Assembly (NCBI GenBank): GCA_047495785.1 | Contig: JBLDXI010000002.1 | Span: 62,001 to 126,000 of the forward strand | Direction of reading: 5' to 3' | From: Lepidodermella squamata | Taxonomy: Eukaryota; Animalia; Gastrotricha | DNA length: 64,000 bases | Shown here: positions 10,636 to 61,638 of the stretch, piece by piece | How the letters are laid out: the number at the start of each line of letters is the position of its first letter | How positions within the stretch are numbered: the first letter of the stretch is position 1 | The notes under the pieces: model-generated | Told to the model about the DNA's origin: nothing | Database searches by the model: none | Seen by the model: only the letters and a program-made list of their open reading frames with translations | Program-made: the position numbers and the translations under genes

Positions 10636-11050
10636 TCATGAAAAAACTTGGGTCATCGTTTCATTCCAGGCTCTCATTAACAATGAAAAGTTATTTCGCG
10701 AATTCCAACTGATTGCCAAGCAAGAATCCTATATTCAAGGTTCCATCTCGAAAAACTGGCTGAATTGTATAAAAAAACTGTTTTATAATTTATAATTATG
10801 TTCTATGACGTCTATATAGAAGCATCAACTATAGCAAAACACGTTTCTATAATCGAACCAATTAGTTGTCATTATGCAACGAAGAGCGCGTATTTTCGTT
10901 ATTAATGACACAAATACTTTGCGGTAACAGTTTGGTAAACAAATCATTATTTTGGATGTAGATTTGTTCCTGTATCAAGGAAGAACATGTCCATCAGAGT
11001 ATTTTCGTCTAATATCGAGGTTAACGACTCATAGCCTCTGCTTTTACACA

Positions 11051-12604: not shown

Positions 12605-12659
12605 AAAGGAGCATTGTTGAAGTTCCCCCTCATAGAATAAATAAAGAAACATGATCTCC

Positions 12660-12880
12660 AAGCGAAATTTTTGGAGAACGTCCATGGCGAATAAGAGGAG
12701 GATTTTGTTTGCTGAGGGAGCGCTGATGGCGCGCAATTTCCTGATGCAAGGTCCTGTTGTAGTCATTGACACGCTGCCTATGCCGAATAGGCGGCTTCTT
12801 AAATCTGATATATTTCTTCGATTTTCCAATTCCTCGGAAACCTATGATTGAGGAAATACACCGATTAAAAAATTGTGATC
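12660..12880 (+). pseudogene. 3' fragment of family X (X2), C-terminal domain remnant
   Basis: FAEGALMARNFLMQGPVVVIDTLPMPNRRL is nearly identical to 10460-10560. It lies ~55 bp after the L3 stop and has no 5' part. Confidence 0.8.
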
Positions 12881-13856
12881 ATTGAGGGCATTAGCTCATA
12901 TATTTTGTGACCAAAAATGACCAACATGAATTTGTTTATTTTACGTCAACCTGAAGGCATGAATATGTGATGTTAAAGAATAGAAAAAACCTCACCCGTG
13001 AGGGTTTAGGGGACGGCTGACGACAGGCGATCGGCTTCAGGGGCCGACAGATCGGCCGCGAACATCCTGCTTATGACCAAAAATTCATAATTTTCGATGC
13101 TATTAAACACTGGTTGCCATTCATTCCGATCTCTGGCAGTTATTTCCGCTAATTCTAGATCCGCAATGTTGTGAATTTCAGTGCTCGCATTAACAGGGTC
13201 GACTTACAAGGTCTCCCGCGTCTAACTGGCTCGTTTGGGCTTTTAATATATTTCACATGAATTTTGAACAACCCAATTTTAAGAAGACTTCTTTTCAAGC
13301 TATCGGTCCATCGGGTTGGCGGTTTACATTTTATATTTTGTGAGAATAAAGTAAATCATTGTTTTAGGTATTATGGATGTTAAAATCGGCCCTCGAATAC
13401 CAAAATGAACACCAATGATTTCGGTCCAGCGTAATGTAAAATCGCCCAGTTTAGGTTCGGTCCAAACGATCAAAGTCGCTCTTGCCTTTGTGCTCTTGTG
13501 ACGAATGCCATCGAAATCCGTCCGGTTTAGAGACATTCCGATTTGGACAACTTTAGTTTGAACAATTTTCAGTGTAAATAAAAGTAACAACGGTAACTAA
13601 ACTCGTTTTTTAATTGAACCAATTACTGATCATTTTTTTTCCTACATGATACGTGTATTTTCATTATTAGTAATCGGCAGAGAAGGCGCGAAGTAACTAT
13701 TATCCATTTATGCACCGGTATCGGCTTGGTAAACAAATCGTTATGACGAACGTATATTTATGTCCTGAATCAGGAAAACTTGGCCATCAGTGTCTTTTCA
13801 TCAACATCGAGTTTATTGGCTATTGGCTCATAATCATACTCACATACTTTTACAAA

Positions 13857-15175
13857 ATGGAACGATTTTTGCTAAGTATGTGGTACCTGCTTTTTTTCCA
13901 GGCTCTCGTATCATCGGCCGATAACTATAACACGACTTTCAAGATGGAGGAATTACAGGAGAAATTCTTCGAGTTGTGTCCTATAGCCAGGTCGAACAAT
14001 CTCCCATCGGCTAACCATCTCCAGACCGACAACTATTCATTGCCTATTCAAAGCTACTTGTCATCCAAGATATTACAGATAATTGAAGTCGATGATTCAT
14101 CGATGAGGTGAATCTTCTGCTTGAAAATCCGTTCCTTGTTTTACTGTTTTACTTTTACTGTAAAAGCATGATGGTTACAATGACTTTCCGAATGACGTGG
14201 GACATTCCATGCGGTCGAGATATCAGGGCTGAGCTCATTCCTGGTTACAGCAAGCTTCCACCGAAACGGATTGAACGATTTCAATTTGAAATTCCGGCCA
14301 ACTCCGTTTGGTGGCCGGATATGCAGCATATCAACGCTATTGGGGAGTCGAGACCACTGAGAAAGTAAGGCAGCATTTCCTCACTCTTTTTGAGAAGCTT
14401 TTAAACGAGCTTCATTCTTCATAAATGCTTTTTCTCAAATTTTTCCAGCGAGAATTTCATCAAAGTGAGACCTCTCCGATATCCGGGACCCAAGTATATG
14501 ATTTACTGCGTCCGATCGTTCACCTCAATGTGTTTCGGCTTCAAGTACACGAAATTTCCATTCGACACAGCGTCGTGCAGTTTCGAGTTCGAAAGCGAAA
14601 ACGTCTCCGAAGAACTAGCGATTACTATCGAATTGTCTGACATTGTGTCCAGCTTCTCCTCTCTGCGAAACGACGACATCTGGTCGCTAGTTAGCTACAA
14701 CGGAACAATGTTCACATCAGTTGGATATCCACATATAACTCTTACGCTAAAACTGAAGCGAAAATACTACTATTTTGTAGCGAATGTATTTGTGCCGACG
14801 ATAACTTTGTACCTACTGCAAATAGCTGGCCTGTTCATGGAACCTCGGCATCCGGATAGACCGACTTTCTGCGTGACTGTGAATCTTGCCTTAGCTGTGC
14901 TCTTGAGTCTGATTTTCTCACTGATTCCTAGAACTTCAGAGGAGGTCTATTTGATTAATATTGTCACAATTTTTATGGTTGTTTGCGCTCTCATCACCGT
15001 GTATACTCTGCTTGCTTGCTGCCTGAGCAAGATGTCTATCGGGAAGCGGTTGTATTTCCAAAAATTCAGAGGTGGTGTGAGATGCATTCGATTAGCTGAT
15101 TTTCTGACTGCGAGTATGTCTCTTTTTATTGGCATTGGAGTTCTGATGTTTTACCTTCAAAAAATGCTTGAGTAA
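13857..15175 (+). CDS. Divergent Cys-loop ligand-gated ion channel subunit L4; exons 13857-14107, 14167-14364, 14449-15175
   Basis: Same exon structure and motifs as L2/L3. Confidence 0.9.
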
Positions 15176-16829: not shown

Positions 16830-18923
16830 TCTTTTTTTTTTTTTTTATTTACATAATCTTTCGGGTGCGTACTCATGGTTATAACGACATCCCTAGTTCG
16901 TTCATATAGCATTTGAAAAGGTCAATATCAACAATTTCCGGAAAGCAGGTTTTCGGTATTCCGTTCCATAGTTGTATAGTGGTAAATGCGTACCGAAAAC
17001 AAACAACTGGGTACTGCGAAGAAATGGACTTAGTGTTGCGGAATGGACGATGGCTTTGAAAATGTCGACTAACACGGCTCCAGTTAGAGGTGTACCGGGT
17101 GTCAGCCAGGACGGACGCCAGTGCCGCCGATGCGGCGCTGAGATTGAATCCCTAGCACACGTTCTGGGCGCCTGCCCCTTTAACTCGCTGCTGATAACGT
17201 CGAGGCACAACAAAATCCGCCAGAAGATTGCTTTGGAACTACGACGCCAAGGATACAACGTCACTGTATAGCCGAAAACGGATCCTCTCGGCGTTTTGAT
17301 ATATTGGCATTTCGAAGAGGAAGCAGACATGGAGCAATCATCGACCCCACAATTAGATTTGAATCATCAGAAGGTCAATTCGGAGATGTCGACATTGAGA
17401 AGCGTTCGATCTACGAGCCGTGTAGCAAGTTCATCTGCGAAGCCTTTGATTTGGACTCGATAGAAGTACACGGCCTTTATATCGGCACACGGGGCTCGCT
17501 AACCAAAGAAGCGATCCAATTACTTCAAGATTACGGAATCAGCAGCAGTACAGCTGTTGATATGGCCCATCAAATCCTTAAGGATAGCATTAGGATCCTG
17601 AATAATCATCTTTACTCAAATAGCCAACCTACTCAAAGACGCTAACTAATCAATCAATCAAGCAATTAATTCATCAATTAATCTCATCAAATTATAAACT
17701 TAATAATTTATAATCCTGTGTCTCAAAGGCAATGTTATAGTTTGTATATAACACAGTATACCAATAAAAGGTTTTCTCTCTCGACTCTCTCGTAGGGCTT
17801 GATGTTCCGCTGCTGGTTTGACGGTTTCGCTAGGCAGATTTGATGGTGGTGTTTTGCTGCCGATGCCCTGGTACCGGTTTTCCTCACAAAGATGCGTCTG
17901 AATTTTGATCTGACTTGCTTCGTTCCGCGACCCGCCACGATTATCTTGTAGAGGTAGGTCATTACTCCTACATACCGTCGTCTACCCAGTGTTTGTAAGC
18001 TCGCTCCGGTGATGTTGCAAAATCTCGTCTGGACGGCATCGAGTTTTTCCAGTGTTGAAGGGGCGGCCGCGAACGAATAGGGGACCATGCCAAACTCGAT
18101 GAATGGCAACACATAGGTTTTGTATGCATTTTCGAGCTGTCGTAGGGACATGAAGGGTCGTAGACGCAGGAGCTGCGTTATCGCCGTGTTTGCTCTTCCG
18201 ATTTTTTGCTTGATGCAGGATTCCATCGACAGCTTCGAGTCTAAGACTAGTCCAAGGAGTGTCGTCGTTTCGATGTTGACTTGATCATCCTCATGGTGCG
18301 TTTCTTCCTCAGCATTAGCTTTCCTGCCTTTTGCGCCACTGTTGAAGCGTGGGTATGAGAATTTCGTATCTACGCGCTTTTTTGGGTCCATCGATACGCG
18401 GTGTGACTGAGCCCATCGTGCTGCACTCGCTTCAGCCATATCGACGTCTCTTAGTGATGCACTGCCAAAATTAAAATCGTCCGCAAAGGTATACGGCTCC
18501 GGTGGCCGGTAACCCAATTCCCTACTGGGGCGCGTGACTGATCGGCTTATGCCACCGTAGAAGACTAGCCATAGAGATGGCCCGAGTGCGCTTCCTTGAC
18601 AGATACCTGCAGCTTCCTCACGCACGCTCGAAGCAGCTCCAGCAACTAGCACTCGAAAGGACCTGTCGCTCAAGTATGACTTGATGAGAGCGTGTACTTT
18701 TCCTTGGATGCCGGCTCGCCAGAGAATGTCTAGTAGCAACAGGCGATCGACCCGATCGAAGGCGCCACTGACATCCGTTTGTCTGAGGATAAAATCCTGC
18801 CGTTGGTTACTTGTGCTGATGATATCGATAATCACGGAGAGTTGCGTATCCGTACATCCACAGCCCACCAAGAATGCAGCTTGCTCAGGTGGAATGGCTC
18901 CATTTGAAATCGCCGAAAATTGC
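16830..18923 (-). mobile_element. 5'-truncated non-LTR retrotransposon (RT of CR1/L2-like type) with poly(A) tail, itself interrupted at ~16990-17785
   Basis: RT motifs DVSGAFDRV, GICQGSALGPSLW, FADD, LLGLVLDSKL. The C-terminus AFTTIQLWNGIPKTCFPEIVDIDLFKCYMNELGMSL* resumes on the other side of the nested insert, followed by AATAAA and poly(A) (poly-T on + at ~16830-16845). Confidence 0.85.
16990..17785 (+). mobile_element. 3' fragment of a restriction-like-endonuclease (RLE; R2/R4/NeSL/HERO-type) non-LTR retrotransposon, degenerate
   Basis: CCHC knuckle CRRCGAEIESLAHVLGAC, RHNKI, IIDPTIRFE..K..Y. Stop at 17269-17271 plus a frameshift; 3' UTR with AATAAA at ~17763. Confidence 0.8.
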
Positions 18924-20268
18924 GAATGCAAGCGAATTTGCGTGAGATAGTCCAACCGTCAACTATACCAGCCGCCGATCCGCCGAGGATTCCTTCTGCA
19001 GCGAAACTCAATACCGAAGGGTCCATAGAAAGCCTAGTGCCTGACAATGTTCAAGAAAGTGACCAAGGCCAAGCTTTACATGGTTCCGAGCAAAGCTTAA
19101 GCCGCCATGGTTCCAAAGATAACCTGACACCACTAGCCTTCAGCAATCTCGCAGATGAATCCAGTCCTTCTGGTTCTCAACAAAATCTGGTTAAAACAGG
19201 ATCTGTTGAGAGCTTATCATCCACTTCAGGTAAAGGAAGCCCTTCTAATTCTCAAAGAGGGTCCGTGGAAAACTTAGCACCCAACAATCCTTCTGGCCAA
19301 GCTAGTCCTACTGGTTCTCAACAAAGTTTGGTCAGAAAAGGATCTGCGGACAGCTTATTATCTACTTCAGGTAAAGGTAGCCCTTCTGGTTCTCAGAGCA
19401 ATTTGGTGGTTCCTGGCATAGACGAGCAGGTAAATTCCCAAGTGTTAACAGATCCTCAGAAGAAAAGCTGGAAGGAAATAATCAGGAATGCCTGGGCAAC
19501 AAGGAAACTGTACATAGGCTTGATCGTCGGAGGCATTTTAGCTTCAGTTGCCATTGGCGTTGGCATCTATTACCTGGCGAAGTACTTGATTTCGCTCAAT
19601 GAAACACCTCCACCAGCAGTGAAGCCGACGAGAAACTGGAAGGATCTTGACAATAAAGCTCGTATAGATGTTTTGCGACAGTCGAACAGGGACGTCGAAG
19701 GTCGAATTGCTGGAAGACGATCCGAAGACAATTTGATAACGAAGATTGCGCGCAATTCTGATAGCGGAGACAACATCGTTATACAAGGAGCACTGACCGC
19801 TCGCAATTTCATGATGCAGGGACCGGTTGTCATCATTAACACACTGCCTATGCCAGATTACACCTTAATTGCAGCAGACAACTTCCTCAATTACGAAAAG
19901 AGTAATGTGATCGATGACTACCATGGAGGCAGCGTGTTTGTGACTAAATAAATGAGATCAAAAGTGTTTGAGCTAATCGGAGAGATATCATGAGATTAAC
20001 TTTGTTAAGTAGCCACAAGCATCTCAAACAATGGGAAGACCAAGATGCAAATTCTGAAATCGGACTTGCTGTTTTTGCTTATTGCCCTTAGGCCTTAGGA
20101 TATGTACCGAAGGTTTAAGATCTAAACTGATAATGCTTTTTTCGGATAGGATAATTCGTAAACAAATAACAAATATAACAATTAGGGAATACCCTATGGC
20201 AAACCATAGAGAAATATAATTTCCTCCCGATCTGGAACCCCTCGATTCGTTTGGCTATTCCCATATAG

Positions 20269-44064: not shown

Positions 44065-46335
44065 ATGGTTTTCGGTACATTGCACTTCGCAATTCTAAGC
44101 ATCCTAGTAGCAGAAGTCGCAACGCAGTGTAAGCTCGAACCCGTGGAACTAGTATTTTTCTATTATTTTTATGGCTTAAAACTGGAATAGCTTGCACGGG
44201 GCAGTGCGCTAATGGGGGAACTTGTCTTGGGACAGGAGTTTGTGGCTGCGTTTCTGGCTGGACGGGAGCTAACTGCACTGAAGGTAACTTTATAATTCCT
44301 AATTTCATATTTTCTCAGAAATTCTAGCAATAATTGAAACTTTAGTACATAAATACTAAAAAACATTTATTGCTGATGATTGATTGTTTTTCTTCAGCTA
44401 TTTGCTCAACACCGTGTCAACCGCGAGGCGGAGCTTGCACCGCCCCAAATGTCTGTACCTGCCTAGCTCGTTTTACAGGTTCGGACTGCTCCACGAGTGA
44501 GTTTCTTGCCAAACTAATTCGATCCTGACCTTGGAATTGTTACCTTTAGTAATTGGCAACCCTTTGTCAGATCCTAACCGCTATCTCCCGCAATATTCGT
44601 ACATCGGAGTGAATTACAGTCAGTTATTTTGGTTTTAAATACGCCCAATCAATTAAGAAGTATTTACAGCTGAAAATTGGTCGCTCGGAAGCAATTTGAA
44701 TTTGAACAATTCCGCATCAGGTTCAGTTTTTCTAAGCAGGAACGTTATCCCTGTCTTCACCGGTTTCTGGAGCAAGCGGGTAGGTTTCCCTTTGTTTCCA
44801 ATAATCAGTACTGTTCGAAACTTCGCTCCATAGACTATGCCGTTCACTGATTTCACAATAAATGTCACCATGTTAGCGGATTATCAGTCTGGAAGTGGCT
44901 TTGATACGTACGGAATAGCCATCCTCTCAAACTCAACAACAATCGCCCAACCAACCAATTCGTCTTTTAAAATTAACAATTTCGCGGGGATTCTGGTTCG
45001 TGTAATGCGATGGAGCAACCAATTCAACGTTGTCTACTCAAACAAGAGCGTTGCGCCTGATTTATCAGGTAGGAATGTTACAAAATTGATGACGTAAAAC
45101 TATGCTCTCGGAAGCTTATATCCAACCTCAGGCCCCGGCCCAGGGTGACACCTGGCTCCAGGGTCGGCACCACATCGGACTAGTCGTCCGCAATGGCTCC
45201 ATTCTCTCACTGGACGTTTGCAGTTTCACGGCTTGCCGAGCGGTTTTTACCAACGTAGCGCTGCCAAAAATCCTGCCGCTAAGTGATATAACGATGCAAC
45301 AGCCTGTAATCGGGCTGATAGCTTACGCCAGCACCGCATATCGTACGCCCATTCAACTTGTCGATCTGAGGTTCTACCCGCTTAGTATGTCGAGGAATTA
45401 TACCTGAGATGTGAAAAACCTCTTGTTTAATTTAGGCTGGAAATTTGATACGGCGCCTGGTTACAACCCAATTTGTGATCCAAGTTGCGCTAATAATGGT
45501 GTTTGCCTAGGAAGCAATAAGTGCAGCTGCAGGCCAGGCTGGACTGGCCAGTTCTGCACGAATCGTGAGTTATTTGATGCCCACGATTTGAGAGCCCAAA
45601 CCCAGTCGTAATAAAGTAGATCTAAATTTGCAACTCGTAGTAGTAGATCCTATCGTAAGAATAAGAGCTTATACGTATGATCCTAGCCTATTCAGACAGC
45701 GGAGTTAGGAATCATCCGTACCAGTTCTATCTAGCAAGGTGAACTCTGTCAGAAGACCAGAAGGGGGATCCCTATGCCAATTTCTTTAATCCTGACCAAA
45801 TCTGCTGTCCTACTTCGCTCTCTGAGCCTATTAGATGGACCATAAGTCAGATATTTTGCCATTCAGCATTGAGCTCTGTATCTACTGATTTTCGTCTGGA
45901 AAATATTTTTTGTTTACCTTTTGCTTCCTTCTCTATAAATCTCCTTCTCAAGTCACATTCGGGTCATTTCTCAATGCCGTTAAGTGAGTTGCAAGATTTC
46001 TCATATGAATTCTATTGAATCGCATTGAAATCAAATGACTGAAGACTGGCATTATTCTTGCAGAAATTTGTGGAACCACGATATGCTCACAAGCAGCTTA
46101 CTGTACGGTCCCCAATACTTGCACGTGCTTTGACAAATGGAAAACTGGCCCTGATTGTTTACAACGTACGGGTGGCTACTTAATTAGCAAATAATTTCAC
46201 AAGTTTAGTGATTTTTCAGCTTTTTGCGATTGTCAAGCAGCAAAAAGATGTGCTGTAATGCTGTGCGACTGCCCAGATTTCTATCAGCGCAGAGACTGCA
46301 ATGCTGCGGATGATGAGATAACGCTATCGAAGTAG
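44065..46335 (+). CDS. Secreted EGF + L-type-lectin-like protein E7
   Basis: Signal MVFGTLHFAILSILVAEVATQ, two EGFs, lectin-like domain, EGF-EGF-Cys tail ending DEITLSK*. Confidence 0.8.
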
Positions 46336-46578
46336 CAAGTCCCACTTTCAAAACTTGCATATCTTCAACAATTTCTGATATGTAAAATCTATCTATCTTT
46401 GTCCCGAGATGAAACTCATTTTATTCGGACTTCAAAATAAATAACTATTAATCATGTTTCTCATGGCAGCGGATAATCAATTCTTAATTTCGAAAAATAA
46501 ACTTAGACGCATTTAACAAGATGAGAAGAGATTATGGGGTTTCTATCTGTGTATTTCCAAGCGTTGCAATTCCTTTCA

Positions 46579-48458
46579 TTATTGGCACTTGCCGCAGGTT
46601 GAAACAATCGTTTGGTTAGTGCCCGGCCACAATTTCGCCTTAGCCAATGCGTTGTTGTAAAGCTCGAAGTTCTTATTGCCGCCAAGTCGGGTCCAGACGC
46701 CAATAGGGTCGTACTCCTCAATGGTAAACGGATCGCCCTGGTTATCGTAGGTATGCGGCTGGATGTTGAAGAAAGTGTAGCGTGGCTCGCCCTCGCCGTT
46801 AGAGTCGAACTTAAAGGCTGGATGGCCAAACTCGCTGGCATCGACTGTTTGCGCCTGGATGCTCTTCAGAAGACCAGCAGCGTTCGATTTCACCTTGTTG
46901 ATGCAGTCAGGGTTGTTGAAGTCCTTCGCACCGGGGCAGGCGCTGGAAAGATGCTGGTGGAGACCCTGGGCACCAGCGACTACGGCGAGGTACAGCAGCT
47001 CAGCTCCATCGTTGACTGGCAGCTCGGCGTCATCGAGCTGGAAGGTGCTCACTGAAACACGAAGAATAACATGAGATAATCAATAATATCGACCGAAATT
47101 ACCATCGCATGGGAAGTATGGATCGTCAAAGCCGCACTGGAAGCGTTGCTCGAAAAATTCTGGAAAAAACACGTCAATAAAAGCAATCAAAGGCGTAAAT
47201 CCTTATACCGATGAGCCATGGCGAGGCACTGCCGGACTTGACAGCTTCAATAAGACGGCTCGCATCGAAAACAACGCCAGTCGTGCGATTTGGGGGGTGG
47301 CCGATAGTCGTGGCGATAGCGCCCTCGACGACATCTTCGTACCCTCCAATGGGGAACTGCCTCGACCAGTAGTCACCACCGATCAGTTGGAAACGGGGTC
47401 TTTCCGCGCCGGACATCTTCGCAGCCTTGTTTTGCTCCATCTTAATAGCGCCAATCAGCCCCTCGAGGGTGGTGTCCTCACAGAAGCAGAGGACAGTCTT
47501 AGCCGTAGCATTTTGCTGGAGGTTCTGGACGATTTTGCCGAACTCATAGCTGGAGCGGGATGTCAGAACCGTTGGCGCCATTTGATCGCTGGCGACGCAG
47601 ATTTTGTTCTCAGCTAGACGAAGACGAAGGTCATCGGCACCCATCTCCCCGTACAAACCTTGGCTGTAGACAAGGTGGACGCAGTCCTGGCCCAGGGTTT
47701 TGATGACATCAGCCAGAGCTGAGGCTTGGTGAATGTCGGACGGGCTGGTTCGCGAGAACATTTTGTAACGACGTCTGTCTGAGAGATCGCCCAACGTAGC
47801 GCCACTGTCGATGAGAGGAATGTCGAAGAGCTCGAGCAGCATGGTCAACGGCAGGCTGACTCGGGAATTGTAGCCTCCTACAACGAAGGTAACAGGTCCG
47901 TACGAGTCGGTGATGTTGTCGATTTGTCCGAGGGTTTCGTCGATTTTGTACCCGGTCCATCCTGAAGCGCGGATGAGGGCGATGTTGGGCAGGGAGCACG
48001 AGTCGAGGATGCTGTAGCCGAGTTGCAGACCGGGTAGAATGTCGGTACGGCGGTTGATGGCATCGATCATGCTTACGAAAAAGTTGGCCTGAAGTACCTG
48101 CTCGACATCGAGCTCACCACAAGCAAACCTTATAAAGAGTTCAATAATTATAAATGTCCGAGCCTTTATCTTTTAAAATTTTGAAATTATTGAAAATTTT
48201 CAAGAGTGAATTTAAGTTTCAATTTCTTTCAAAATTTCAGAATTGTTATTTCTACTTTTGCCATCTCATCAAATCTAAGTATATTGATTTCCAAACTCAC
48301 CGAGGGTCATAAGGAAATCGAAGAGTGGCGTTTGGTCGATGAATCGGGAGGACCAGGCCAATATTGAAGTCGGCGTACTTGCTCCACATGCCAGCTGGTG
48401 CCGAGTGGGCAACGCCAAGCATAGCTAAGGCGACCAACGCAAAAAGGCCACCTGACAT
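46579..48458 (-). CDS. Secreted mGluR-like Venus-flytrap-only protein G1; exons 48458-48301, 48128-47209, 47159-47103, 47051-46579
   Basis: Signal MSGGLFALVALAMLGVAHS; IGLVLPIH, INRRTDILPGLQLGYSILDSC, ATLGDLSDRRRYKMFSRTSPSD, SQGLYGE, GGDYW, FDSNGEG. Stops at VSTCGKCQ*; no TM. Confidence 0.85.
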
Positions 48459-48648
48459 TTCTCTTAAAATTCCCTAAAAAATAAGACGCGCAATCAACCT
48501 TAGATCAGCTTTTTTGGACAAAACTATCGCACGACATCGATTCTCATTTTGAAGCTAACTAATTGGAGGAAGTGCTTTAAAAATAGCTCAATTATCTTAA
48601 AATTGGCAGAAATAATCGGATTATGTTAAGCTTAATTCCAATTTAGGC

Positions 48649-50824
48649 CTAGCAAGTGCCGCAAGTCGACGTGACTTTGGGGATAGTCGCGAAAGCCGCC
48701 GTAGTATTCAAGGCAGAGGCGGATTTCCAAGAGGCTACAACCGTGTACTTGCCCTTGCTGTACCAGTTGAAGTCGTAGCTGTGGGGAAAAAATAGGCATA
48801 AAGCGCCTTAAAATTTGTTAATGGGTAACTTACTTGGCGAAACCGTCGCCATTTTTGTCGAAAATTGGGTTATTGCCATTCTTCGCGCTGACAATCATAG
48901 AGTAGAGCTCGGGAGCTTTTTGGCCAGCGTTGATGCCTGGCAGGCATTCGGTCTTGTTCGTGGCAGAGCAGGAGGTGGCAACGAGCTGATCAACGCCATC
49001 GATAACAGCCTTGACGGTATCAACCATAGTGCCGTAGAACGAACCGACTATCTGAACATCGGTCGCTGACAGGGCAATCTTCGAAACTATGAAACAATCG
49101 TGAAACATCTGAAATAAGCATCTTTGAAGCTTAACCTACCATCGCATTTGGACGATCCTGATCCGGCAAAGGTGCACTTGAACTTGGTTTCGATGTATTC
49201 TAAGATTAAAAACATGAAATAAGGAAAGTTCGAAGGTTCGGGAATACCTTTTGTGTAAGGGTCCATTGTAGCCGTATCCTTGATGATGTCATTGAGCGTC
49301 TTGGGGTCCGGACGGGCTGATGAGCTGAGACTGATCGCGATCGCATTTTCAGCCGCGGCCTCAACACCAGTCAGATCGAAACTGGTTCCCCAGAACTCTG
49401 ACGCCAGGATCTGGTACGAAGCTTTAGCCTTGGTAATGCTTCTCAACAGAGAACGACCGGTGATTTCTTCGCAGAAGCAGACGACTCCCTTAGCTGTCGC
49501 ATTCTTGCCAATGTTAGTGACAATCGTGTCGAATTGGGCAGCGGCGTCGGCTGTTTCGAAGGCTGGGGCTTGTTGGTCGCTGGCAATGCAGACGCCGAGG
49601 CGCTTCAGCTGCTTCCTGAGGTCGCTAGCTCCAAGGGTGCCGTACAGGCCCTCGCTGTAGACGATGTGGACGCAGCCGAAGCCGAGCTTGCTCGCCATAA
49701 CAGCGATTGCGTTGACTTGATTAGTGTCCGATGGGGCTGTGCGAGCGTACATTGGGTAACGGCGGCGGTCGGCGAGGTCAGATGACGTAGCGAAAAAGTC
49801 AATCAGGGGAATATCAACCTGAGCAGAATGAAACAATTTAAAAGGAGTATAACAACACCAGGCAGATGCAACCCTTTTAGGTATCTAAGAAAAATTGCTT
49901 ATGACAGGATCCTTTTACTAAATTAATCTTGCAGAAGGCTGCTCTTCTGAGGTTCCCGCGCCCGTTGGTCATCTTTAAGATGGCTCCAAAATTAAAACGT
50001 GAATCCCTAGGAATGAGACCCTTGGATTGGGTCTGAAGGGGTTAACTATAAGGTGGATTCCCTATCCTATCCTATCCCTTTTGCTAGCTTCAGAAATCCA
50101 CCTTAAAGTTCCCTAATAGAGCTCCCTGGTGATGAGGCTATGTGGGCCGGAGGTGGGCGCTCTGGGGTGACCCATGGACCTAATGGATCCCTAAGATTGC
50201 TCCCAGGGTGATCCCTTGGCTCCCATCGAAATGGTACCTTATCTAATTTGTTGACTCTCTGTTGACTGTTGATCCCTCTTTTCAGAAACCTATTCGAATA
50301 CCTGTTGGAGCATGACGGCAAGTGGAGCAGAGACGCGAGAGTTGTATGCGCCAATGACGGCAAGGGGCGGGGTCATGGTCGCCATGGGGTCGTTGGGCGC
50401 AGACAGGCGCATGACCTTTGACACTGCCCAGGGTGTCGCGACGTCAATAGCGTGAGACGGGAGCTTGCACGAGTCAATGATGTTGTAGCCGAGCTTTAGA
50501 CCACCGAATTTCTTGGCGTCATTCGCGGCTTTGACTGCGGCGCGGAAAGCCGGCACCAAGAGGGCGACTGAGGGTGACAGGGCGCCGCATGCATACCTGG
50601 AAATTGAAATAGTTCACCTAACGTATGGGGAGGATGGTTCAATGTTCAATGTACCTCATGTCATAGGAAACCACCATACTAGCGTTGTTGTCGTGAATCG
50701 GCAGCACCAAACCGATTTGAATGTCACCATCTTCGACCCAGATGCCGCGAACATCACGGCCAGCATCGACAAATGCAGCCGAGAGCGCGGCCAAACAAAC
50801 TGCGATGCGAACAAAACTCGCCAT
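48649..50824 (-). CDS. Secreted mGluR-like flytrap-only protein G2; exons 50824-50655, 50596-50302, 49818-49248, 49199-49140, 49086-48834, 48778-48649
   Basis: Signal MASFVRIAVCLAALSAAFVDA; IGLVLPIH, LGYNIIDSC, GAYNSRVS, ATSSDLADRRRYPMYARTAPSD, SEGLYG, FDKNGDG. Ends VTSTCGTC*. Confidence 0.85.
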
Positions 50825-51357
50825 TTAGCTGTAACACTGAACCCTAAATTCGAAGAAATTGATAAAGAATGAAAAATCAAAATTTAACAGAAGGTAGAAT
50901 TTCTCTCACAGATCGAGGTTATCACATTTATTTGTCAAGTCTTTTGTTTTTCCAGAATCGTGTTTCTTTCAATTTTTTTCGTTTTATTGCCCTTTTTCAA
51001 TAGCATTCTGTCGAATCATGCCTTGGATAGCTCCTGTCTGCTAATTCGCGCTTACAGTAGGTGCAAGCGCCGGCGTTTTATAACTGCCAGATGATAATGT
51101 ATATGGTGCGACAAGCGCGTTGACCGTAGCAATAAAACATTTTATTACACCCCAGCACCACGTTGCAATAAAACTAACTTTTTATTAGTCGCGCATTTTA
51201 AAAATATTATGATTAAAAAAAATAAGCTCAATTTATCGAGAAAATAGGTTGAATGGCATATAAATTTCACGTCTTTCGACCCGTATATCAATCGATTCGT
51301 CTCGCTACGCTCTATCGATTCCTATATGTGAGAAATAATGTTTTTCGGAATCATTTT

Positions 51358-52906
51358 TCAGCCGCATTTGCCAGCCGAACACGTTGAAGTGATTTTTTGC
51401 CTCGTCCCCGGCCATAATCGCGCCCTGTCCCAAACATCGGTGAAAATCTGCGAAAATTGGCCACGTGACCAAAATGCCAATAGCCCGCGGCTGTAGACAA
51501 GGTGGACACAGCCTAATTCGAATTTTTCGACCAAATCAGATATCGCCGACGCTTGGTGGGTATCTGAAGAGACTATTCTAGCGAATAATTGATACTCGCT
51601 ACGGTTCGAAAACTCTTTCAGAGTCGAACTTGTATCGATGAGTGGTAAATCTTGTGATTGAAGATACCGAGCGAAAGACAGCCTGCTTTGGGTTCCGATG
51701 ACGAAATCAATGTTCGGCTTTTTCCAGTTGGTTGAATTTGCCCGGGAAATTGCGATTTCCGGCTGCCGGCATGAGTCGATTATACTGTAGCCTATGCGCA
51801 ATTTAGCGGCGAAGTAATCAGGTCGGCGATTGATGGCGTCAATGATTGAGGTGAAAAAACTCGCCTGGAGAGCTTGTTTAGGGTCCAGTTCGCCGCATGA
51901 TGATTCATCACTTTGAAAGCAAAGTTTTTCTCAATTTTTTTATTTCGAGAAAATCTCGGAAAACCAGCAGAATAAAGTTTTAAAAAAATAAAAAAATTGG
52001 AAAAATTCTTCCTTAATTAATTTTAATGTGACCTACATTTTAGAAGATTTAAGAAAGATTTTACATTTTAAATTTAAAAAAATTTAAATATCTTTTTTTA
52101 AATTTTTGTGAGCGCGAATTAAAAATCTGAAAATTATTATGGCATTTGAAACACCTCTTCCTATTTCATATTTTTGAGTATTAATTTTTTGGGAATATCT
52201 TTTAGCGGAACCAAATTTACAGTGAGCGGAACCAAATTTGCTGTATCGGAGCCAAATATGCTGTAGCGGAACCAAATTTTCTTTTTCCGGAACCAAACTC
52301 AAAATATGCCAAGAGTCATTTTTTGAATATTTCTAAGAAATTTAGGCTAAGCATGAATTCTGAATTGAACACTGCGTCTTATAAAGAATGTTGCGGTGAA
52401 TTCACTGGTGAATTTTTCAGAATTAATGGGACCAATTTTGACATGCAATAAATATCCGAAAAGCGATTTCAGGCCACTAGAAAATTCTAAAATTTGGTTC
52501 CGCTAACAGCAGATTTGGCTCCGCTACAGCATATTTGGTTCCGATACAGCAAATTTGGTTCCGCTCACTGAAAATTTGGTTCCGCTAACAGGAAGACCCT
52601 TAATTTTTTTACTGACAGCAAATCATTACCTATTTATATATTTATTTTCTAATTTTTCTGTAATTTTTCTAATTTTAATAGAATTTTGGAATTAAAAACA
52701 ACATCATGATGAATATTTTACCTGCCATTGTTAGGCTTTGAGTTGTGGAATGGCAGAACGAGGCCGATGTTAAAATCGCCATCATGCGACCCGTAGGATC
52801 CGATAATCTGGTCAGCGGCACTCGCGATCCTGGTTAGATGACAGACGCAGATTATTGTGGCCGTAATAACCCTGGCCACCATCAGTCGTCGACCACTAGT
52901 CACCAT
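51358..52906 (-). CDS. Internally deleted flytrap-only gene G3 (~245 aa); exons 52906-52722 and 51910-51358
   Basis: Signal, GDFNIGLVLPFH, IGYSIIDSC, FARIVSSD, VHLVYSRG, then a direct in-frame jump to the family C-terminus LWPGTRQKITSTCSAGKCG*. Confidence 0.7.
52191..52599. mobile_element. Foldback/MULE-like non-autonomous element in the G3 intron
   Basis: GGG...CCC ends, inverted arrays of the ~20-bp unit AGCGGAACCAAATTT, and an apparent 10-bp TSD TTAATTTTTT on both sides. Confidence 0.75.
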
Positions 52907-53397
52907 TGTAAAACAGCAAATTATGCATTGGTAACGCGAAGAAGACACTCTTTAGTTGTTACATTAATTATCTAAGGTGATGTATTCACCTCGCACGAGA
53001 GCGCAATAAAAATGTAAGAAAAAAATGCAGTCGACATGTAAATTAGCTGATAAAATACTCCGACCGAAGGAAGGGCAGAGATTATGCTTAAATAATTTCT
53101 GCATTAAATGAAAAAAATCCGAATTAAACAGAAAATACCTAAAATTCCTGAGAAATCAATTTTTTCAAGAATATTCTCGTAACCTTGTTTGGTGACCTAT
53201 ATTCCACCGGCAAGCAATGAAATCAGGTCAAATTAATAAAACTAGGCACGCAAAGGTCACATTTTTATTACATTTACTTCTTATGCGTAGGCTTCTTTCT
53301 AGGTCAAATTAAGCTATAATAATTACAAAATGATAAATTTAAAGTTCGCTTTCCATTTATCTGTGAACAATTTTGATCACATCGATACCTTTATCCC

Positions 53398-55641
53398 TCA
53401 CTTCGGCGTGCCATTTTTCTGGCAAGCGCATTGGCTGGTAATCGTCGCATTCTGGCCGTTGATGACCCACTTCTGCACATTTTCCCAGTCCTGAGCCACC
53501 GACGTGGCCTTGAGGCCGTTCGGACGCGTCCACTCGCCGACTTTCTTGTACAAGTACCGGTTCATGTAGAACTGGCCGAAGCCTTTGCGGCGGAAGTTGA
53601 AGAAATCGTAAGCTGGAACGCCGTCGCCGAATTCGTCGAAGCGGAACCGCTGTGTGCCGTTGGTTGGCGTGAAGCTGGTTCGTTTTATGTAGGGATACAA
53701 TTTAGCCGAGTTTGTTGTTACGTAATCGATGCAGGCGGCTTTTGTTCGGTTTTTGCATTCGGCATTGACCATGTCATTCAGGCCGGTTATCGAAGCTTCG
53801 AAGGCGAGCTTGAAGAGATAGGAAATCGATGGGTCGGATGGCAGGTCTTGACCGCGAAGAACCATGGTTTCGGCTTTGGTTGCAAAATTAGAAAATATTT
53901 GAAAAATCACATTTTCGAAATTTTAAAATTTTAAAAATTTTCTTTAATATTTTGAAATATTAAAAGAAATTCCTTGACCATGTTTGCAAATTTAGCGAAT
54001 TTTAAATTTTTTTGAAAATTTTAAAATTAAAAACTTTAAAAATTAAAAGAACAATTATTTTTATATTTATTTGGAAAAATTAGCTTACGGTCACATCTCG
54101 GCTTGTTTCGAATAGCCCTGTCGAAGGTGCAGTGAAATCGGCCTTCGAGGTACTCTCTGAACCATGGATGTTGCGTATTGATAGATTTCAGCTGTTCATT
54201 GAACCATGTCGCATCGCTCAACGAAACCATATTCCCAGCTACGGCTGAATTACCCTCGGAAAATAGCGATACCGAAACCGCAGCTTCGGCTACATTTTCC
54301 AAGCTCGGAAACGTATTCGTGCCCCAATAATCACTAGGAAAAAATTGCAAAAATTAAATTTCAATTTTTAAAAATGATCCAGTATATAAAAAATTTCAAA
54401 AATTCAAATTTATATTCAAATTTAAATTAAAGGTCGAAATTTTATATTCAGCATTTTATTGAAAAATTGAAAAAAAAATTAATTAAATAATTTGACAATT
54501 CAATTTGGAAATAAAGTTTTTGAAATTTTCAATTTTTCAAATTTAATTTTAATTTTATAATTTTGATTTTTATAATTTTTGTGCTTTTGATTTTTATTTA
54601 TAAATTACCTAGCCATAATCATGAATCGCGGTGCATCGGGTAGTGTTGATTTAGCGTATTGTAAACTTGACAGTAAACCCTGAATAGTCGGATCCTCACA
54701 AAAGCACACAACAGCCGAAACATTGGGCGCCTCGTGGATCCGCGAGACAATCACATCAAAATCGCCTAAATTATTATTATTCAACAAATTCGGCGCCTTC
54801 TGATCGGTGGTAATGCAAATTCCACGCTGCTCCATCGACCGCCTAATATCATCAGCCCCACTCTCGCCGTAGATTCCCTTACTGTAGACAAGGTGGACAC
54901 AATTGAAATTCATCTTCTTCGCAAGATCAGCAATCGCCTCGGCTTGGAAACGGTCTGAAGGTGAGGTTCGAAGTAGTAAGGGATATCTGAGCTGATCCGA
55001 CAACTCGCTGGCAGTCGATCCGAAATCAACCAGCGGGGTTCCGAATAGTTCGAGGTAGGTCGCTAAGGGTCCAGTGACCCTGGAGCTGTACGCACCCAGT
55101 GCGAGGGTGATCAAATTGTTGTCTCGCCTGTTTCGTTCCAGTTTAGCCGTGCTCCATACTGTGGCGTAGGCTAGGGCTATATTAGGCAGGTCGCATGAAT
55201 CGATGATGCTGTAGCCGACTTTGTAGCCTGGTAGAATACGTTGGTCCAAATTGACGGCATTGATCATGCGGCGGAAGTACGAAACTCGCAGGGCCTGTTC
55301 AGCATTCAAATCGCCACAGGCATACCTTAAAAAATTCAGAATATTATATTTTAATTAAATTGACTAATTATTAGAATTAAAAATTAAACCTAAATAAATT
55401 TCAATTTTTTTGAAAATTTGAAAATTAATTTAAAAATTAAATTTTTCGATATTTGAAATTGTTGATAAAAATTACTCATTAACCTGAGATCATAAGGCAG
55501 TTCCAGCGTTTCATTTGTGTTATGAATCGGTAAAACGAGTCCAATAATGAAATCGCCCGGTTCAGTATAGGCCTGACCTTTGACCTCGGAAATCACGCCG
55601 AAAATCACGGCAATAATCACAGCGAAACTCAACAATTTCAT
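53398..55641 (-). CDS. Secreted mGluR-like flytrap-only protein G4; exons 55641-55484, 55325-54609, 54333-54089, 53873-53398
   Basis: Signal MKLLSFAVIIAVIFGVISEVKG; GDFIIGLVLPIH, ILPGYKVGYSIIDSC, GAYSSRVT, STASELSDQLRYPLLLRTSPSD, ASDYW, PWFREY, FDEFGDG. Ends ITSQCACQKNGTPK*. Confidence 0.85.
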
Positions 55642-59235: not shown

Positions 59236-61638
59236 TCAGGCCGCGAGATTGGCATTAGATGAAGTACGTGGCTTTTTCGGTGCCAAGAACCCAGGGTAGA
59301 TCCAAAACGCGGATAAAATTGTCGAAACAATGATGATAACGAACGCGAGAGCTTCCTGCTGTTTAATCGTATCTGACTGCACGGTTATCGCTATTAAAAT
59401 TGAAACTGGCAGTAGCGTACCTCCTGCAATAAGTGACAGGCAGCATGGAAGGAACTCGTGACAACTAGCTGGTAATCCTTTTATCTGCCTCAGTCGGAAT
59501 GCATATAACGAAGCGATGGCTATCAGCACGGATTCAACAACTGCCACGGCTCCCAGAAAAGACCATCCAATGGCAGGTGACATTGAACATTTGACGAGCC
59601 AAACTTCAATCACAGCGTCCAATTTGTCGTCGTACGTCGGTTGAGATGCTAGCTCATATGCGCAGATCATGTCATTGCTAACCGACCAGCCTATTAGGAT
59701 TCCAAGGTTTACGGCAGCAATAGAAATTGCTCCTATACTCGTCTGTTTATCAAAGGAATTCCAAATCTGAATCGGGAAAGACAGGGTTAAGTTCGGATAC
59801 ATGGTAAGATTTGTCGACGATCTCTCCCTATGCAAGTCATCCGAGTTCTGAAAAGCGCTCAAAGTATTAAAATGTCCACTTTGAATCTGAAGCGAATGAT
59901 CATGGATCCCTTTTTGGACAAAAAAGTTGATACTGATCAACCGGGTGGCTATCAAGCTCAAGACAATAGAAATTCCGATCCCAAGCAGTAAGAAACACGC
60001 TGAAGCAAGTCTTGCGCTCTCCAACCCTCTATCAAAGGTAAAAGCCCCTGCTGATGTGTTAAGGATCAAACAGCCAACTAGGCCAGTAATTTTGGAGAAT
60101 TTGAAGTAAACCTTTCTCGGCTTATTCAATGAAATTGTTATTATCGAACCCGCTTGAATTATTGTGGTAACGATAATCAGAAACCAGCATACACTGAGAG
60201 AAGTTGTCGAAACGTGTTGCACATGTGTAAGAACAAGGTGTCGATCTCGGGGAGGAGCCCCAAGAGGCCATATAATAGGTCGGAGAAATCGAAATTCGTA
60301 ACTATCGAGCGAAAATTCTGAGAGACCTCTGTCCAGCTTCTGACGGATGTGAATCAAGTCCTTGAGGCCATCAGGCGTCCATTGAGTGACTGTTTGTATG
60401 TCGCCTAATGTTGAGCCTGAGGAACTGAAGGCCGACCTTCCAATCCTCATTCCGATGAACTCGGATGATAGAACAGATTCATTTGCGATTTTAGCGACTA
60501 GTTCGGGGTTGGAGTGGTAATCGCGGAGAGTTAGGTTGTACTCAGACTTGAGACGCAGCTCAGTGTTGTGAAGGGCGAAGAAGGCTGTTGAAAACGTGTC
60601 GTAAACGACGTAAGCAGTGACGAGAGGCGCATCTGCAGTAGCAGGGGTCGCGTTTATTCCCTTGATTATGTAAGCGTCGTAGTCAGCTGCATTGTCTCCG
60701 AAAGAGGTCACTCGACTGTAGTTATCAGGCCTGCTTATGTAGCCAAAGTAATACGTCTGTCTAATCTGGGCTAACAAGTCCTGTTGCGAGCAATCCTGGG
60801 CCATTGTATTGTCGACGCTTATAGCAGTTATCATTGTTATGAAAACGTAACGATGTCCATTCATTCCTTGCTTGTAGGCAAAGCACAGAAATCGTACAAC
60901 ATGGTAGTTGCTAGTTATAGACAAAACGATCACTCTAGCTCCTGAATTCTTAATAACAGCAACATCCTCTGGGGTTACGCTTGCAATAGTTACATTACCG
61001 AAAAACACGTGAAATGCCGCAATTTCAAAGCCATTCGCAACAGCCTGGTCGTGAAGCAATGTTGCCGTTCCATAGTCATTCGCGTTCCCCATAAACGCTA
61101 TGAGCGATATTCTGTTCCAATTCCCGATATCGCGGATAAATTTCAGAATCGTTATCGCTGTTGTTTTATAGGTAGGCATTCGCAGGTAGAGATTTGGAAA
61201 TAAGTAATGATCAGCGAGGAATGGTGCAGTGCATACGGTACTTATCGCGATTTGGTTGATGTAGCCTGCGAAACGGCCAAGAGCTCGACATCCATTGGAT
61301 ATTGCCGGGCCAACGATTATTGGAGATTGGTAACCATTCCGCCCTGATCCGTCGAATTCTCGGCTGAAGAGAACAGTCTCCTTTACTGCATTCATGCCGA
61401 GAAGCTCTTCGCGGTGGACGAATTCGATATGATAATCCGGCAGAATGTCGCTTCGGTTGTTGACGCGATCGACGGCGAGTTGAACTGTTAGAAAAGACGC
61501 AAGACTTCGCTTAGCCTCGATTTCCAATACCGGAGTGAGGAAGAGTATTTTCAAGCGATGCGGCTTCGTTTGCGAGTCTACACATAAAATCATTATAGAT
61601 AGTATGGTAAGTGAGGCAAAATATAGTCTCGTCAGCAT
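59236..61638 (-). CDS. Intronless orphan class C GPCR, GABA-B-receptor-like (flytrap + 7TM, no Cys-rich domain)
   Basis: Signal MLTRLYFASLTILSIMILCVDS; LAVDRVNNRSDILPDYHI, IIVGP, WPLGAPPRD linker; seven hydrophobic segments ending WIYPGF; short tail with no coiled coil. Confidence 0.85.
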   Translation of the reverse strand: MLTRLYFASLTILSIMILCVDSQTKPHRLKILFLTPVLEIEAKRSLASFLTVQLAVDRVNNRSDILPDYHIEFVHREELLGMNAVKETVLFSREFDGSGRNGYQSPIIVGPAISNGCRALGRFAGYINQIAISTVCTAPFLADHYLFPNLYLRMPTYKTTAITILKFIRDIGNWNRISLIAFMGNANDYGTATLLHDQAVANGFEIAAFHVFFGNVTIASVTPEDVAVIKNSGARVIVLSITSNYHVVRFLCFAYKQGMNGHRYVFITMITAISVDNTMAQDCSQQDLLAQIRQTYYFGYISRPDNYSRVTSFGDNAADYDAYIIKGINATPATADAPLVTAYVVYDTFSTAFFALHNTELRLKSEYNLTLRDYHSNPELVAKIANESVLSSEFIGMRIGRSAFSSSGSTLGDIQTVTQWTPDGLKDLIHIRQKLDRGLSEFSLDSYEFRFLRPIIWPLGAPPRDRHLVLTHVQHVSTTSLSVCWFLIIVTTIIQAGSIITISLNKPRKVYFKFSKITGLVGCLILNTSAGAFTFDRGLESARLASACFLLLGIGISIVLSLIATRLISINFFVQKGIHDHSLQIQSGHFNTLSAFQNSDDLHRERSSTNLTMYPNLTLSFPIQIWNSFDKQTSIGAISIAAVNLGILIGWSVSNDMICAYELASQPTYDDKLDAVIEVWLVKCSMSPAIGWSFLGAVAVVESVLIAIASLYAFRLRQIKGLPASCHEFLPCCLSLIAGGTLLPVSILIAITVQSDTIKQQEALAFVIIIVSTILSAFWIYPGFLAPKKPRTSSNANLAA

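What the first reader, a model, noticed from the sequence alone, without database searches (positions are those of the whole stretch)
46579..55641. Tandem family of secreted, flytrap-only mGluR homologs: candidate soluble amino-acid-binding proteins
Seen: four divergent genes each have a signal peptide and an mGluR-type Venus-flytrap domain. All stop within a few residues of the first cysteines of what would be the Cys-rich domain (STCGKCQ*, STCGTC*, STCSAGKCG*, SQCACQKNGTPK*). No Cys-rich or 7TM exon lies downstream: G1 abuts a convergent gene and G2 ends ~190 bp before the G1 ATG. AATAAA follows G1, G3 and G4. Known: mGluR/CaSR-type receptors signal through CRD + 7TM, and AChBP is the precedent for a soluble ectodomain-only ligand-binding protein. 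Inference: the shared endpoint in highly diverged paralogs suggests an old, selected soluble family acting as amino-acid carrier, buffer, decoy or perireceptor protein.
Basis: partly seen in the sequence, partly recalled or inferred. Interest (0 to 1): 0.88.

Follow-up and report, generated by a model that had tools for sequence, protein, structure and literature searches.

The report
Secreted stand-alone flytrap binding proteins
An unidentified invertebrate carries a tandem cluster of genes that encode only the ligand-binding "Venus flytrap" half of a glutamate-receptor-like protein. The genes have a secretion signal and no membrane or signalling part, and they are kept intact in a distant relative, so they are probably soluble amino-acid-binding proteins, a form not described so far in the literature I could search.

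Summary

- **Gene models:** G1 (535 aa), G2 (492 aa) and G4 (531 aa) are intact GT-AG multi-exon genes. Each has a signal peptide and a complete ANF_receptor flytrap whose best solved-structure matches are mGluR7 and mGluR1. Each stops 2-9 residues after the first cysteine of what is the Cys-rich domain in mGluRs.
- **G3:** at 245 aa it is an in-frame, internally deleted relic.
- **No downstream signalling exons:** the 64-kb window holds no Cys-rich-domain or kinase coding. The only 7TM coding belongs to a separate neighbouring gene with its own flytrap.
- **Orthologues:** metagenome contigs of a distant relative carry 1:1 orthologues in the same order with the same endpoints. Synonymous sites are saturated (pS 0.80-0.87) while pN is about 0.33, so the genes are under constraint.
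- **Ligand site:** the alpha-amino-acid clamp (S165, T188, D208, Y236, D318) is kept. The glutamate side-chain residues R78 and K409 are not.
- **New point:** the nearest kin are flytraps fused to Eph-like kinases, not GPCRs.

The scan noted similar membrane-less flytrap arrays elsewhere in this genome; those notes are unchecked. Expression, secretion and the ligand remain untested.

The parts
46579..48458 (-). G1: 4-exon gene (48458-48301, 48128-47209, 47159-47103, 47051-46579), 535 aa. Signal peptide plus a complete flytrap, ending STCGKCQ*.
   Evidence: Gene model. Pfam ANF_receptor 7e-31. mGluR7/mGluR1 flytrap E about 1e-29. 12 mature Cys and no TM or GPI-like tail.
48649..50824 (-). G2: 6-exon gene (50824-50655, 50596-50302, 49818-49248, 49199-49140, 49086-48834, 48778-48649), 492 aa, ending STCGTC*. 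The stop lies 190 bp upstream of the G1 ATG.
   Evidence: Pfam ANF_receptor on exons 2 and 3. Orthologue end STCAGC* in L003.
51358..52906 (-). G3: 2-exon open frame (52906-52722, 51910-51358), 245 aa. It is an internally deleted flytrap relic: a signal peptide, the N-terminal part of lobe 1, then directly the last ~25 residues, ending STCSAGKCG*.
   Evidence: Pfam match only to ANF_receptor profile positions 24-129. Odd number of mature Cys. No counterpart between the G4-like and G2-like genes in L001.
53398..55641 (-). G4: 4-exon gene (55641-55484, 55325-54609, 54333-54089, 53873-53398), 531 aa, ending SQCACQKNGTPK*.
   Evidence: Pfam ANF_receptor 1e-36. Orthologue in L001/L002 ends SQCLCEQQGSTKN*.
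46420..46425 (-). AATAAA, 154 nt after the G1 stop.
53264..53269 (-). AATAAA, 129 nt after the G4 stop.
51181..51186 (-). AATAAA, 172 nt after the G3 stop.
45450..46335 (+). 3' exons of a convergent plus-strand gene (EGF-like Cys-rich exons, stop near 46335, AATAAA at 46436). This gene occupies the DNA downstream of G1.
   Evidence: three-frame translation.

Best explanation
G1, G2 and G4 are real, selectively maintained genes for secreted, N-glycosylated, stand-alone Venus-flytrap proteins of about 55 kDa. Each is essentially the natural equivalent of the truncated mGluR1 ligand-binding construct used for crystallography. That construct comprises two lobes closing on a small ligand and ends where the Cys-rich domain would begin.

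**Ligand (inferred).** The ligand is an alpha-amino acid or a close derivative, held by the conserved backbone clamp (equivalents of mGluR1 S165, T188, D208, Y236, D318). The side-chain pocket differs between paralogues: the K409 position is G, F or S, and R78 is absent. So each paralogue probably has its own specificity, and glutamate is unlikely.

**Function (inferred).** With no Cys-rich domain, 7TM, TM or kinase, the proteins cannot signal alone. They would act extracellularly as binders, for example as a buffer, carrier or perireceptor protein. Alternatively they could act through flytrap-flytrap association with membrane receptors of the same clade.

**Shown versus inferred.**
- Shown: gene structure, domain content, absence of downstream receptor exons, orthology, synteny and constraint.
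- Inferred: secretion, ligand class and physiological role.
For: - **Gene structure:** intact GT-AG models with shared intron positions.
- **Domain content:** ANF_receptor is the only Pfam domain. The best PDB sequence matches are mGluR flytraps.
- **No membrane anchor:** the only strongly hydrophobic segment is N-terminal, the C-termini are hydrophilic, and there are 4-6 NxS/T sites per intact paralogue.
- **No downstream receptor exons:** no NCD3G/7tm_3 or kinase coding downstream. A convergent gene lies below G1.
- **Orthologues:** the relative's contigs L001/L002/L003 carry G4-like, G2-like and G1-like genes in the same order. Stops fall at the same place, and only about 100 bp separates the G4-like stop from the next ATG.
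- **Orthology support:** 1:1 orthology has 98-100% support.
- **Constraint:** pN is 0.32-0.35 against pS 0.80-0.87 in the three longest ortholog comparisons.
- **Polymorphism:** the G4-like CDS has 2 synonymous and 0 nonsynonymous differences between two independent assemblies.
- **Cysteines:** exactly 12 are conserved in every intact member.
- **Ligand residues:** clamp residues are conserved while R78 and K409 are not. [quoted passage not shown]
Against: - There are no transcript, protein or binding data.
- The signal peptide is judged only by hydropathy and the -3/-1 rule.
- I could not fold the spliced proteins, because no reference exists for them, so lobe closure and the fate of the two terminal cysteines are untested.
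- The relative's G1-like copy has an in-frame TAG at the G1 intron-2 site.
- G2 has E instead of D318 and lacks an AATAAA.
- The family is known from only two species.
- The C-terminal exon alone finds no solved structure.
Confidence: 0.65

Rival explanations
1. Soluble partner or decoy subunits. The flytrap-only proteins act mainly by pairing, flytrap to flytrap, with the membrane flytrap-kinase receptors of the same clade or with class C-like receptors. They would then be ligand-presenting co-receptors or dominant-negative decoys rather than free binders.
For: - The G family and the flytrap-kinases form one clade with 100/100 support.
- The relative has at least three such kinases, and this genome is noted to have one (s1-374233, unchecked).
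- The helix corresponding to the mGluR1 dimer-interface helix C (LLxLFDIP) is nearly identical in G1 and largely kept in G4 (the interface assignment is from my own knowledge of mGluR1 structures).
- There is a precedent: GABAB1e, an ectodomain-only isoform (PMC8577127).
Against: - No interaction data exist.
- The equivalent of the mGluR inter-subunit Cys140 is absent.
- G2's helix C is less hydrophobic.
- No kinase gene lies next to the cluster.
Confidence: 0.2
2. Gene-model artefact. The flytrap exons are the 5' part of longer receptor genes whose TM, kinase or 7TM exons lie far away or are joined by trans-splicing or read-through.
For: - Tight same-strand spacing, with AG dinucleotides just upstream of the ATGs, hints at polycistronic transcription.
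- Another note in this genome describes a stop splitting a flytrap from a 7TM (s1-368566, unchecked).
Against: - All seven ends, four here and three in the relative, carry a stop at the same place.
- The next gene starts 100-190 bp later with its own signal peptide.
- The window holds no Cys-rich-domain or kinase coding, and its only 7TM coding is in W859, a separate gene upstream with its own flytrap.
- The DNA below G1 belongs to a convergent gene.
Confidence: 0.05
3. Decaying remnants of a former receptor array, that is, pseudogenes without function.
For: - G3 is clearly a deleted relic.
- The relative's G1-like copy carries an in-frame TAG.
Against: - G1, G2 and G4 keep 4-6 exons open.
- They keep all 12 cysteines and the ligand clamp.
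- This holds across a divergence at which synonymous sites are random.
Confidence: 0.05
4. Real secreted flytraps, but the ligand is not an amino acid. It could be an ion such as Ca2+, a peptide, or another small metabolite.
For: - Side-chain pocket residues are unlike those of any characterised receptor.
- A bulky Tyr or Phe replaces mGluR1 G319.
- Class C and VKR flytraps include ion-responsive members (my own knowledge of CaSR and SmVKR2).
Against: Five of five backbone-clamp residues are kept in G1 and G4, and four of five in G2. This clamp is the signature used in the field for amino-acid recognition (PMC3703292, PMC6307864).
Confidence: 0.1

Closest known systems
Metabotropic glutamate receptor ligand-binding domain (e.g. 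the mGluR1 flytrap construct of PDB 1EWK; mGluR7, 2E4Z)
   Same: - It gives the best sequence matches among solved structures (E about 1e-29).
- It shares the two-lobe ANF_receptor fold signature.
- It shares the cysteines equivalent to C67-C109, C289-C291, C378-C394 and C432-C439.
- It shares the alpha-amino-acid clamp.
- The G proteins end where the 490-residue crystallised construct ends.
   Different: - The G proteins are encoded as complete genes with their own stop, with no Cys-rich domain and no 7TM.
- R78 and K409 are not conserved.
- There is no Cys140 equivalent.
- There is an extra clade-specific Cys (in CVHLVYS).
- In trees the family lies outside all sampled 7TM-linked flytraps.
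Class IV mGluRs (the DmXR type)
   Same: The backbone-binding residues are kept while R78 and K409 are replaced. [quoted passage not shown]
   Different: Class IV proteins are full receptors with a Cys-rich domain and 7TM. The G family has neither.
Venus kinase receptors (VKR) and the flytrap-kinases of the relative (P0152, P0174, the P0022 gene)
   Same: The flytraps of P0152, P0174 and P0022 are the G family's nearest kin (clade 100/100). They share the CVHLVYS and CFCE motifs and the C-terminal Cys pair.
   Different: - The G genes have no TM or kinase.
- The relatives' kinases resemble Eph receptors. Canonical VKR kinases are insulin-receptor-like (PMC3703292), so these are not canonical VKRs either.
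Acetylcholine-binding protein (AChBP)
   Same: The concept is the same: a secreted, stand-alone homologue of a receptor's ligand-binding ectodomain, encoded by its own gene.
   Different: The fold is unrelated (Cys-loop pentamer). AChBP secretion and decoy function are experimentally shown, whereas nothing is shown here.
Ectodomain-only products of class C genes (GABAB1e isoform) and the GPI-anchored EhVFT of Entamoeba
   Same: These are flytraps without a 7TM part (PMC8577127; PMC12965686).
   Different: - GABAB1e is a splice isoform of a receptor gene, not a separate conserved gene family.
- EhVFT is GPI-anchored and related to the bacterial binding proteins. The G proteins have hydrophilic C-termini and an mGluR-type sequence.

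Membership tests
ANF_receptor / type I periplasmic-binding-protein-like flytrap (Pfam PF01094) | Significant match to the family profile across both lobes. | tested here: met
   G1 7e-31, G2 6e-26, G4 1e-36, all above the 25.4-bit cutoff. G3 matches only profile positions 24-129.
Class C GPCR (mGluR/CaSR type) | Nine-cysteine Cys-rich domain (NCD3G) after the flytrap. | tested here: not met
   The proteins stop after the first two cysteines. No NCD3G was found by Pfam or tblastn.
Class C GPCR (mGluR/CaSR type) | Seven-transmembrane domain (7tm_3). | tested here: not met
   No hydrophobic segment lies beyond the signal peptide. tblastn with 49 full-length receptors gives no 7TM match downstream of the G genes. 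The only marginal match (E 0.8) is inside the separate neighbouring gene W859.
Glutamate-specific mGluR binding site | Alpha-amino-acid clamp: S165, T188, D208, Y236, D318 (mGluR1 numbering). | tested here: met
   HMMER alignment to 1EWK and MAFFT. All five are kept in G1 and G4. G2 has D318E.
Glutamate-specific mGluR binding site | Distal-carboxylate residues R78 and K409 (and Y74). | tested here: not met
   The R78 column is a gap, Y74 is Q in G1, and K409 is G (G1), F (G2) or S (G4).
Venus kinase receptor | Single TM plus an intracellular tyrosine kinase after the flytrap. | tested here: not met
   No TM. No kinase coding in the window.
Soluble ectodomain-only binding protein (AChBP-like concept) | Own gene, signal peptide, no membrane anchor. 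| tested here: met
   by sequence only.
Soluble ectodomain-only binding protein (AChBP-like concept) | Demonstrated secretion and ligand binding. | not testable with these tools
   This needs expression, secretome and binding assays.

The most novel reading that the evidence does not exclude
The flytrap-only proteins and the Eph-like flytrap-kinase receptors of the same clade form one extracellular amino-acid signalling system. Secreted flytraps of different specificities would capture ligands and pair with the receptor's flytrap, switching kinase dimers on or off. That would be a soluble-subunit logic not known for any flytrap receptor.
Probability: 0.15. Interest if true: 0.8.

Novelty: new variant of a known kind. 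Interest (0 to 1): 0.6.

Why it matters
Flytrap modules are known in three settings. They occur as bacterial periplasmic binding proteins and as the heads of animal receptors (class C GPCRs, natriuretic-peptide receptors, iGluR N-terminal domains, VKRs). Soluble animal forms are known only as engineered constructs or splice by-products.

A conserved, tandemly duplicated gene family that encodes only a secreted mGluR-type flytrap would show that animals also use this module as a free extracellular binder. It would add a second example of the AChBP principle.

The proteins would also be practical tools. They would be small, naturally soluble and naturally stable class C-type domains with diverse pockets, useful for structural work and biosensor design. 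The link to Eph-like flytrap-kinases suggests an unexplored amino-acid sensing system in this lineage.

Tried and rejected
- **Close annotated relatives:** the word-based search found only two metagenomic ORFs. The exhaustive search found nothing closer than about 38% identity apart from these. Its long top hits are fused fish receptor arrays.
- **JGI metagenome scan:** the scan with a family alignment returned nothing.
- **Neighbouring 800-aa receptor:** the homologue search returned nothing.
- **Organism identification failed.** I tried Rfam, the Atlas, a sample-name literature search and the scan's own notes.
- **Short flytrap hits in the database:** these turned out to be exon fragments of ordinary receptors that continue into the Cys-rich domain, not flytrap-only kin.
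- **Last exon alone:** it finds no solved structure.
- **dN/dS estimators:** standard estimators fail because dS is saturated, so I give raw pN and pS instead.
- **Structure prediction:** not run on the G proteins, because the spliced sequences have no reference and I did not type them.
- **Literature:** searches for natural flytrap-only or secreted class C proteins found only GABAB1e and EhVFT.
Full report
**What is there.** The minus strand between 46579 and 55641 carries four head-to-tail genes.

I built gene models from the sequence. All introns are GT-AG.

Two intron positions are shared:
- Phase 2, after the '...YD.R' motif that follows the signal peptide. G1, G2 and G4 share it, and G3 has a phase-2 intron at the corresponding place.
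- Phase 1, after the 'C-D' of the second lobe-1 cysteine pair. G1, G2 and G4 share it, as does the relative's G4-like gene.

The four products are:

| Gene | Length | Terminus | State |
|---|---|---|---|
| G1 | 535 aa | STCGKCQ* | intact |
| G2 | 492 aa | STCGTC* | intact |
| G3 | 245 aa | STCSAGKCG* | internally deleted |
| G4 | 531 aa | SQCACQKNGTPK* | intact |

- The exons hit only Pfam ANF_receptor.
- Among solved structures, the large G1 exon matches mGluR7 and mGluR1 flytraps best (E about 1e-29). CaSR matches more weakly, at about 1e-22.
- In each protein the only strongly hydrophobic 19-mer is the N-terminal one. The C-terminal 19 residues are hydrophilic, so there is neither a TM helix nor a GPI-type tail.
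- G1, G2 and G4 have four to six NxS/T sites each; the relic G3 has three.

**G3 differs.** Its open frame runs from 'CVHLVYSRG' in mid-domain straight into the last ~25 residues ('...RARLWPGTRQKITSTCSAGKCG').
- It therefore lacks lobe 2 and most of the C-terminal third.
- It has an odd number of mature cysteines.
- Its first intron holds a 437-bp foldback element.
- The relative has no gene in the corresponding position.
- I read G3 as a relic.

**Is anything downstream?** I searched the window by tblastn with 49 full-length class C receptors.
- The search finds only the flytrap exons and the flytrap of a separate gene at 59.2-61.6 kb.
- No Cys-rich-domain match appears anywhere.
- The only 7TM-region match is marginal (E 0.8, 59416-59697) and lies inside that separate gene.
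- tblastn with flytrap-kinases and an Eph receptor finds no kinase coding.
- G2's stop is 190 bp from G1's ATG.
- Below G1 lies the 3' end of a convergent plus-strand gene with EGF-like exons. Its stop is near 46335 and its AATAAA is at 46436. G1's own AATAAA is at 46425-46420.
- AATAAA also follows G3 and G4. G2 has none before the G1 ATG.

**Where the proteins end.**
- MAFFT with six full-length mGluRs, and BLAST against two mGluR-like exon fragments, give the same placement.
- 'STC-GKC' falls on the 'C-S/G-x-P-C' that opens the mGluR Cys-rich domain.
- The 1EWK mGluR1 construct is 490 residues long. From my own knowledge it spans residues 33-522 and ends at practically the same place. The G proteins are thus natural equivalents of a construct known to be soluble and ligand-binding.

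**Relatives and selection.**
- The databases hold no annotated close relative.
  - The exhaustive search gave two metagenomic ORFs at 47-52% identity.
  - After those came receptors at no more than about 38% identity.
  - The long top hits are gene-prediction fusions of fish receptor arrays.
- The two ORFs lie on eukaryotic contigs from ENA metagenomes.
- **L001/L002:** a G4-like gene ends '...SQCLCEQQGSTKN*'. About 100 bp later the signal peptide of a G2-like gene begins.
- **L003:** a G2-like gene ends '...STCAGC*'. About 700 bp later a G1-like gene begins, and its frame ends '...ESTCDCQSEEQ...' followed by an acidic tail and a stop.
- The gene order G4, G2, G1 is the same as in the window.
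- A maximum-likelihood tree pairs each window gene with its counterpart at 98-100% support. The three paralogues therefore predate the species split.
- The G1, G4 and N-terminal G2 ortholog comparisons have pN 0.32-0.35 against pS 0.80-0.87. Synonymous sites are fully randomised while two thirds of nonsynonymous sites are unchanged. The short C-terminal G2 fragment is less constrained (pN 0.44, pS 0.74).
- Standard estimators fail for that reason.
- Two independent assemblies of the relative differ by two synonymous and no nonsynonymous changes in the G4-like CDS. This is a tiny sample but points the same way.
- Paralogues within the window are 38-40% identical.
- **Caveat:** the relative's G1-like copy has an in-frame TAG ('CTC GTA TAG TTT') exactly at the site of G1's second intron. 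That copy may be dead, or the contig may be wrong.

**How to weigh the shared endpoint.** The common endpoint is most simply inherited from one ancestor. It is not independent evidence of selection. The evidence for selection is that three multi-exon frames, all twelve cysteines and the ligand site have stayed intact over this divergence.

**Ligand site.**
- I indexed the HMMER alignment to 1EWK (chain index plus 32 gives the mGluR1 residue) and the MAFFT alignment.
- The residues that hold the alpha-amino and alpha-carboxyl groups are present in G1, G4 and the relative's G4-like gene: S165, T188, D208, Y236 and D318. G2 has E at 318.
- E292 and the C289-x-C291 pair ('CFCE') are also kept.
- The residues that hold glutamate's distal carboxylate are not kept. 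R78 falls in a one-residue gap, Y74 is Q in G1, and K409 is G, F or S in G1, G2 and G4.
- The eight-residue motif and the primacy of Ser165 are summarised in PMC3703292.
- The pocket positions differ between paralogues, which fits different specificities.

**Cysteines.** Each intact member has exactly twelve mature cysteines in conserved columns.
- Eight correspond to the four intradomain disulfides of mGluR1.
- The other four are:
  - a clade-specific Cys in 'CVHLVYS';
  - the lobe-2 Cys that in mGluR/CaSR bonds to the Cys-rich domain (my own knowledge of those structures);
  - the two terminal cysteines.
- An even count, conserved also in the kinase-linked kin, suggests that the short C-terminal stub is stapled to lobe 2 rather than being a ragged remnant. 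This is inference. I could not fold the spliced proteins.

**Unexpected kin.** The best single-domain hit after the orthologues, P0033/P0152, is not a GPCR.
- It is a flytrap, a TM helix and a tyrosine-kinase domain in one 890-aa ORF from the same relative.
- Two more such genes exist there (P0174, and the P0022 gene).
- Their kinases resemble Eph receptors at 31-37% identity. Canonical VKR kinases are insulin-receptor-like (PMC3703292).
- In both trees, the G family and these kinase-linked flytraps form one clade with 100/100 support, apart from every 7TM-linked flytrap sampled.
- The flytrap-only genes are one group in 76% of bootstrap trees.
- The family is therefore an mGluR-like module in structure. 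Its immediate history is shared with receptor kinases, which are also obvious candidate partners.

**Verdict.**
- Most likely these are secreted, stand-alone, amino-acid-type binding proteins (confidence 0.65).
- Whether they act as free binders or as soluble partners or decoys of the clade's receptor kinases is open.
- I found no description of such a gene family in the searchable literature. The nearest are the GABAB1e splice isoform and the GPI-anchored Entamoeba EhVFT.
- The scan's own unchecked notes report other membrane-less flytrap arrays in this genome.
- I rate it a new variant of a known kind, interest 0.6.

Noticed in passing
window 59239-61638 (-): An intronless 800-aa ORF on the same strand, just upstream of the cluster. 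It has a signal peptide, a flytrap most like GABA-B1 (PDB E 2.5e-8) and seven hydrophobic segments by eye. It has no Cys-rich domain, no Pfam 7tm_3 hit and no homologue in the word-based search. It looks like an orphan GABA-B-like receptor.
   Followed up: partly
window ~24000-46335 (+): A large tandem family of small genes. Each has two exons beginning 'MPFTDF.IN.T' and ending '...DLRFY.LS', followed by EGF-like Cys-rich exons. The core exons have no Pfam match.
   Followed up: no
window 52177-52613: A foldback (MITE-like) element inside G3's first intron. It has 121-nt inverted arms, 84% complementary, each built of ~20-nt CGGAACCAAATTT subrepeats.
   Followed up: partly
L004 4278-6950; L005 1129-3824; P0174: The related organism has at least three receptors that join a flytrap of this clade to a TM helix and an Eph-like tyrosine kinase. 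The architecture resembles VKRs, but the kinase type differs.
   Followed up: partly
L003 2325-2332: The G1-like orthologue reads CTC GTA TAG TTT exactly where G1 has its second intron. This looks like a six-base intron remnant that leaves an in-frame stop. The next intron of G1 is absent there too.
   Followed up: partly
window 48459-48648; L001 ~11644-11745: The same-strand spacers between family members are very short, 190 bp and about 100 bp. An AG lies a few bases upstream of the next ATG, and G2 has no AATAAA. This may indicate polycistronic transcription with trans-splicing.
   Followed up: no
window 488-15175 (+/-): Several exons with weak, sub-threshold Pfam matches to both halves of Cys-loop channels (E 1e-3 to 4e-5). 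This is a very divergent channel family.
   Followed up: no
window 17735-18955 (-): An ORF with a reverse-transcriptase domain (RVT_1, E 2e-10), indicating a retroelement copy.
   Followed up: no
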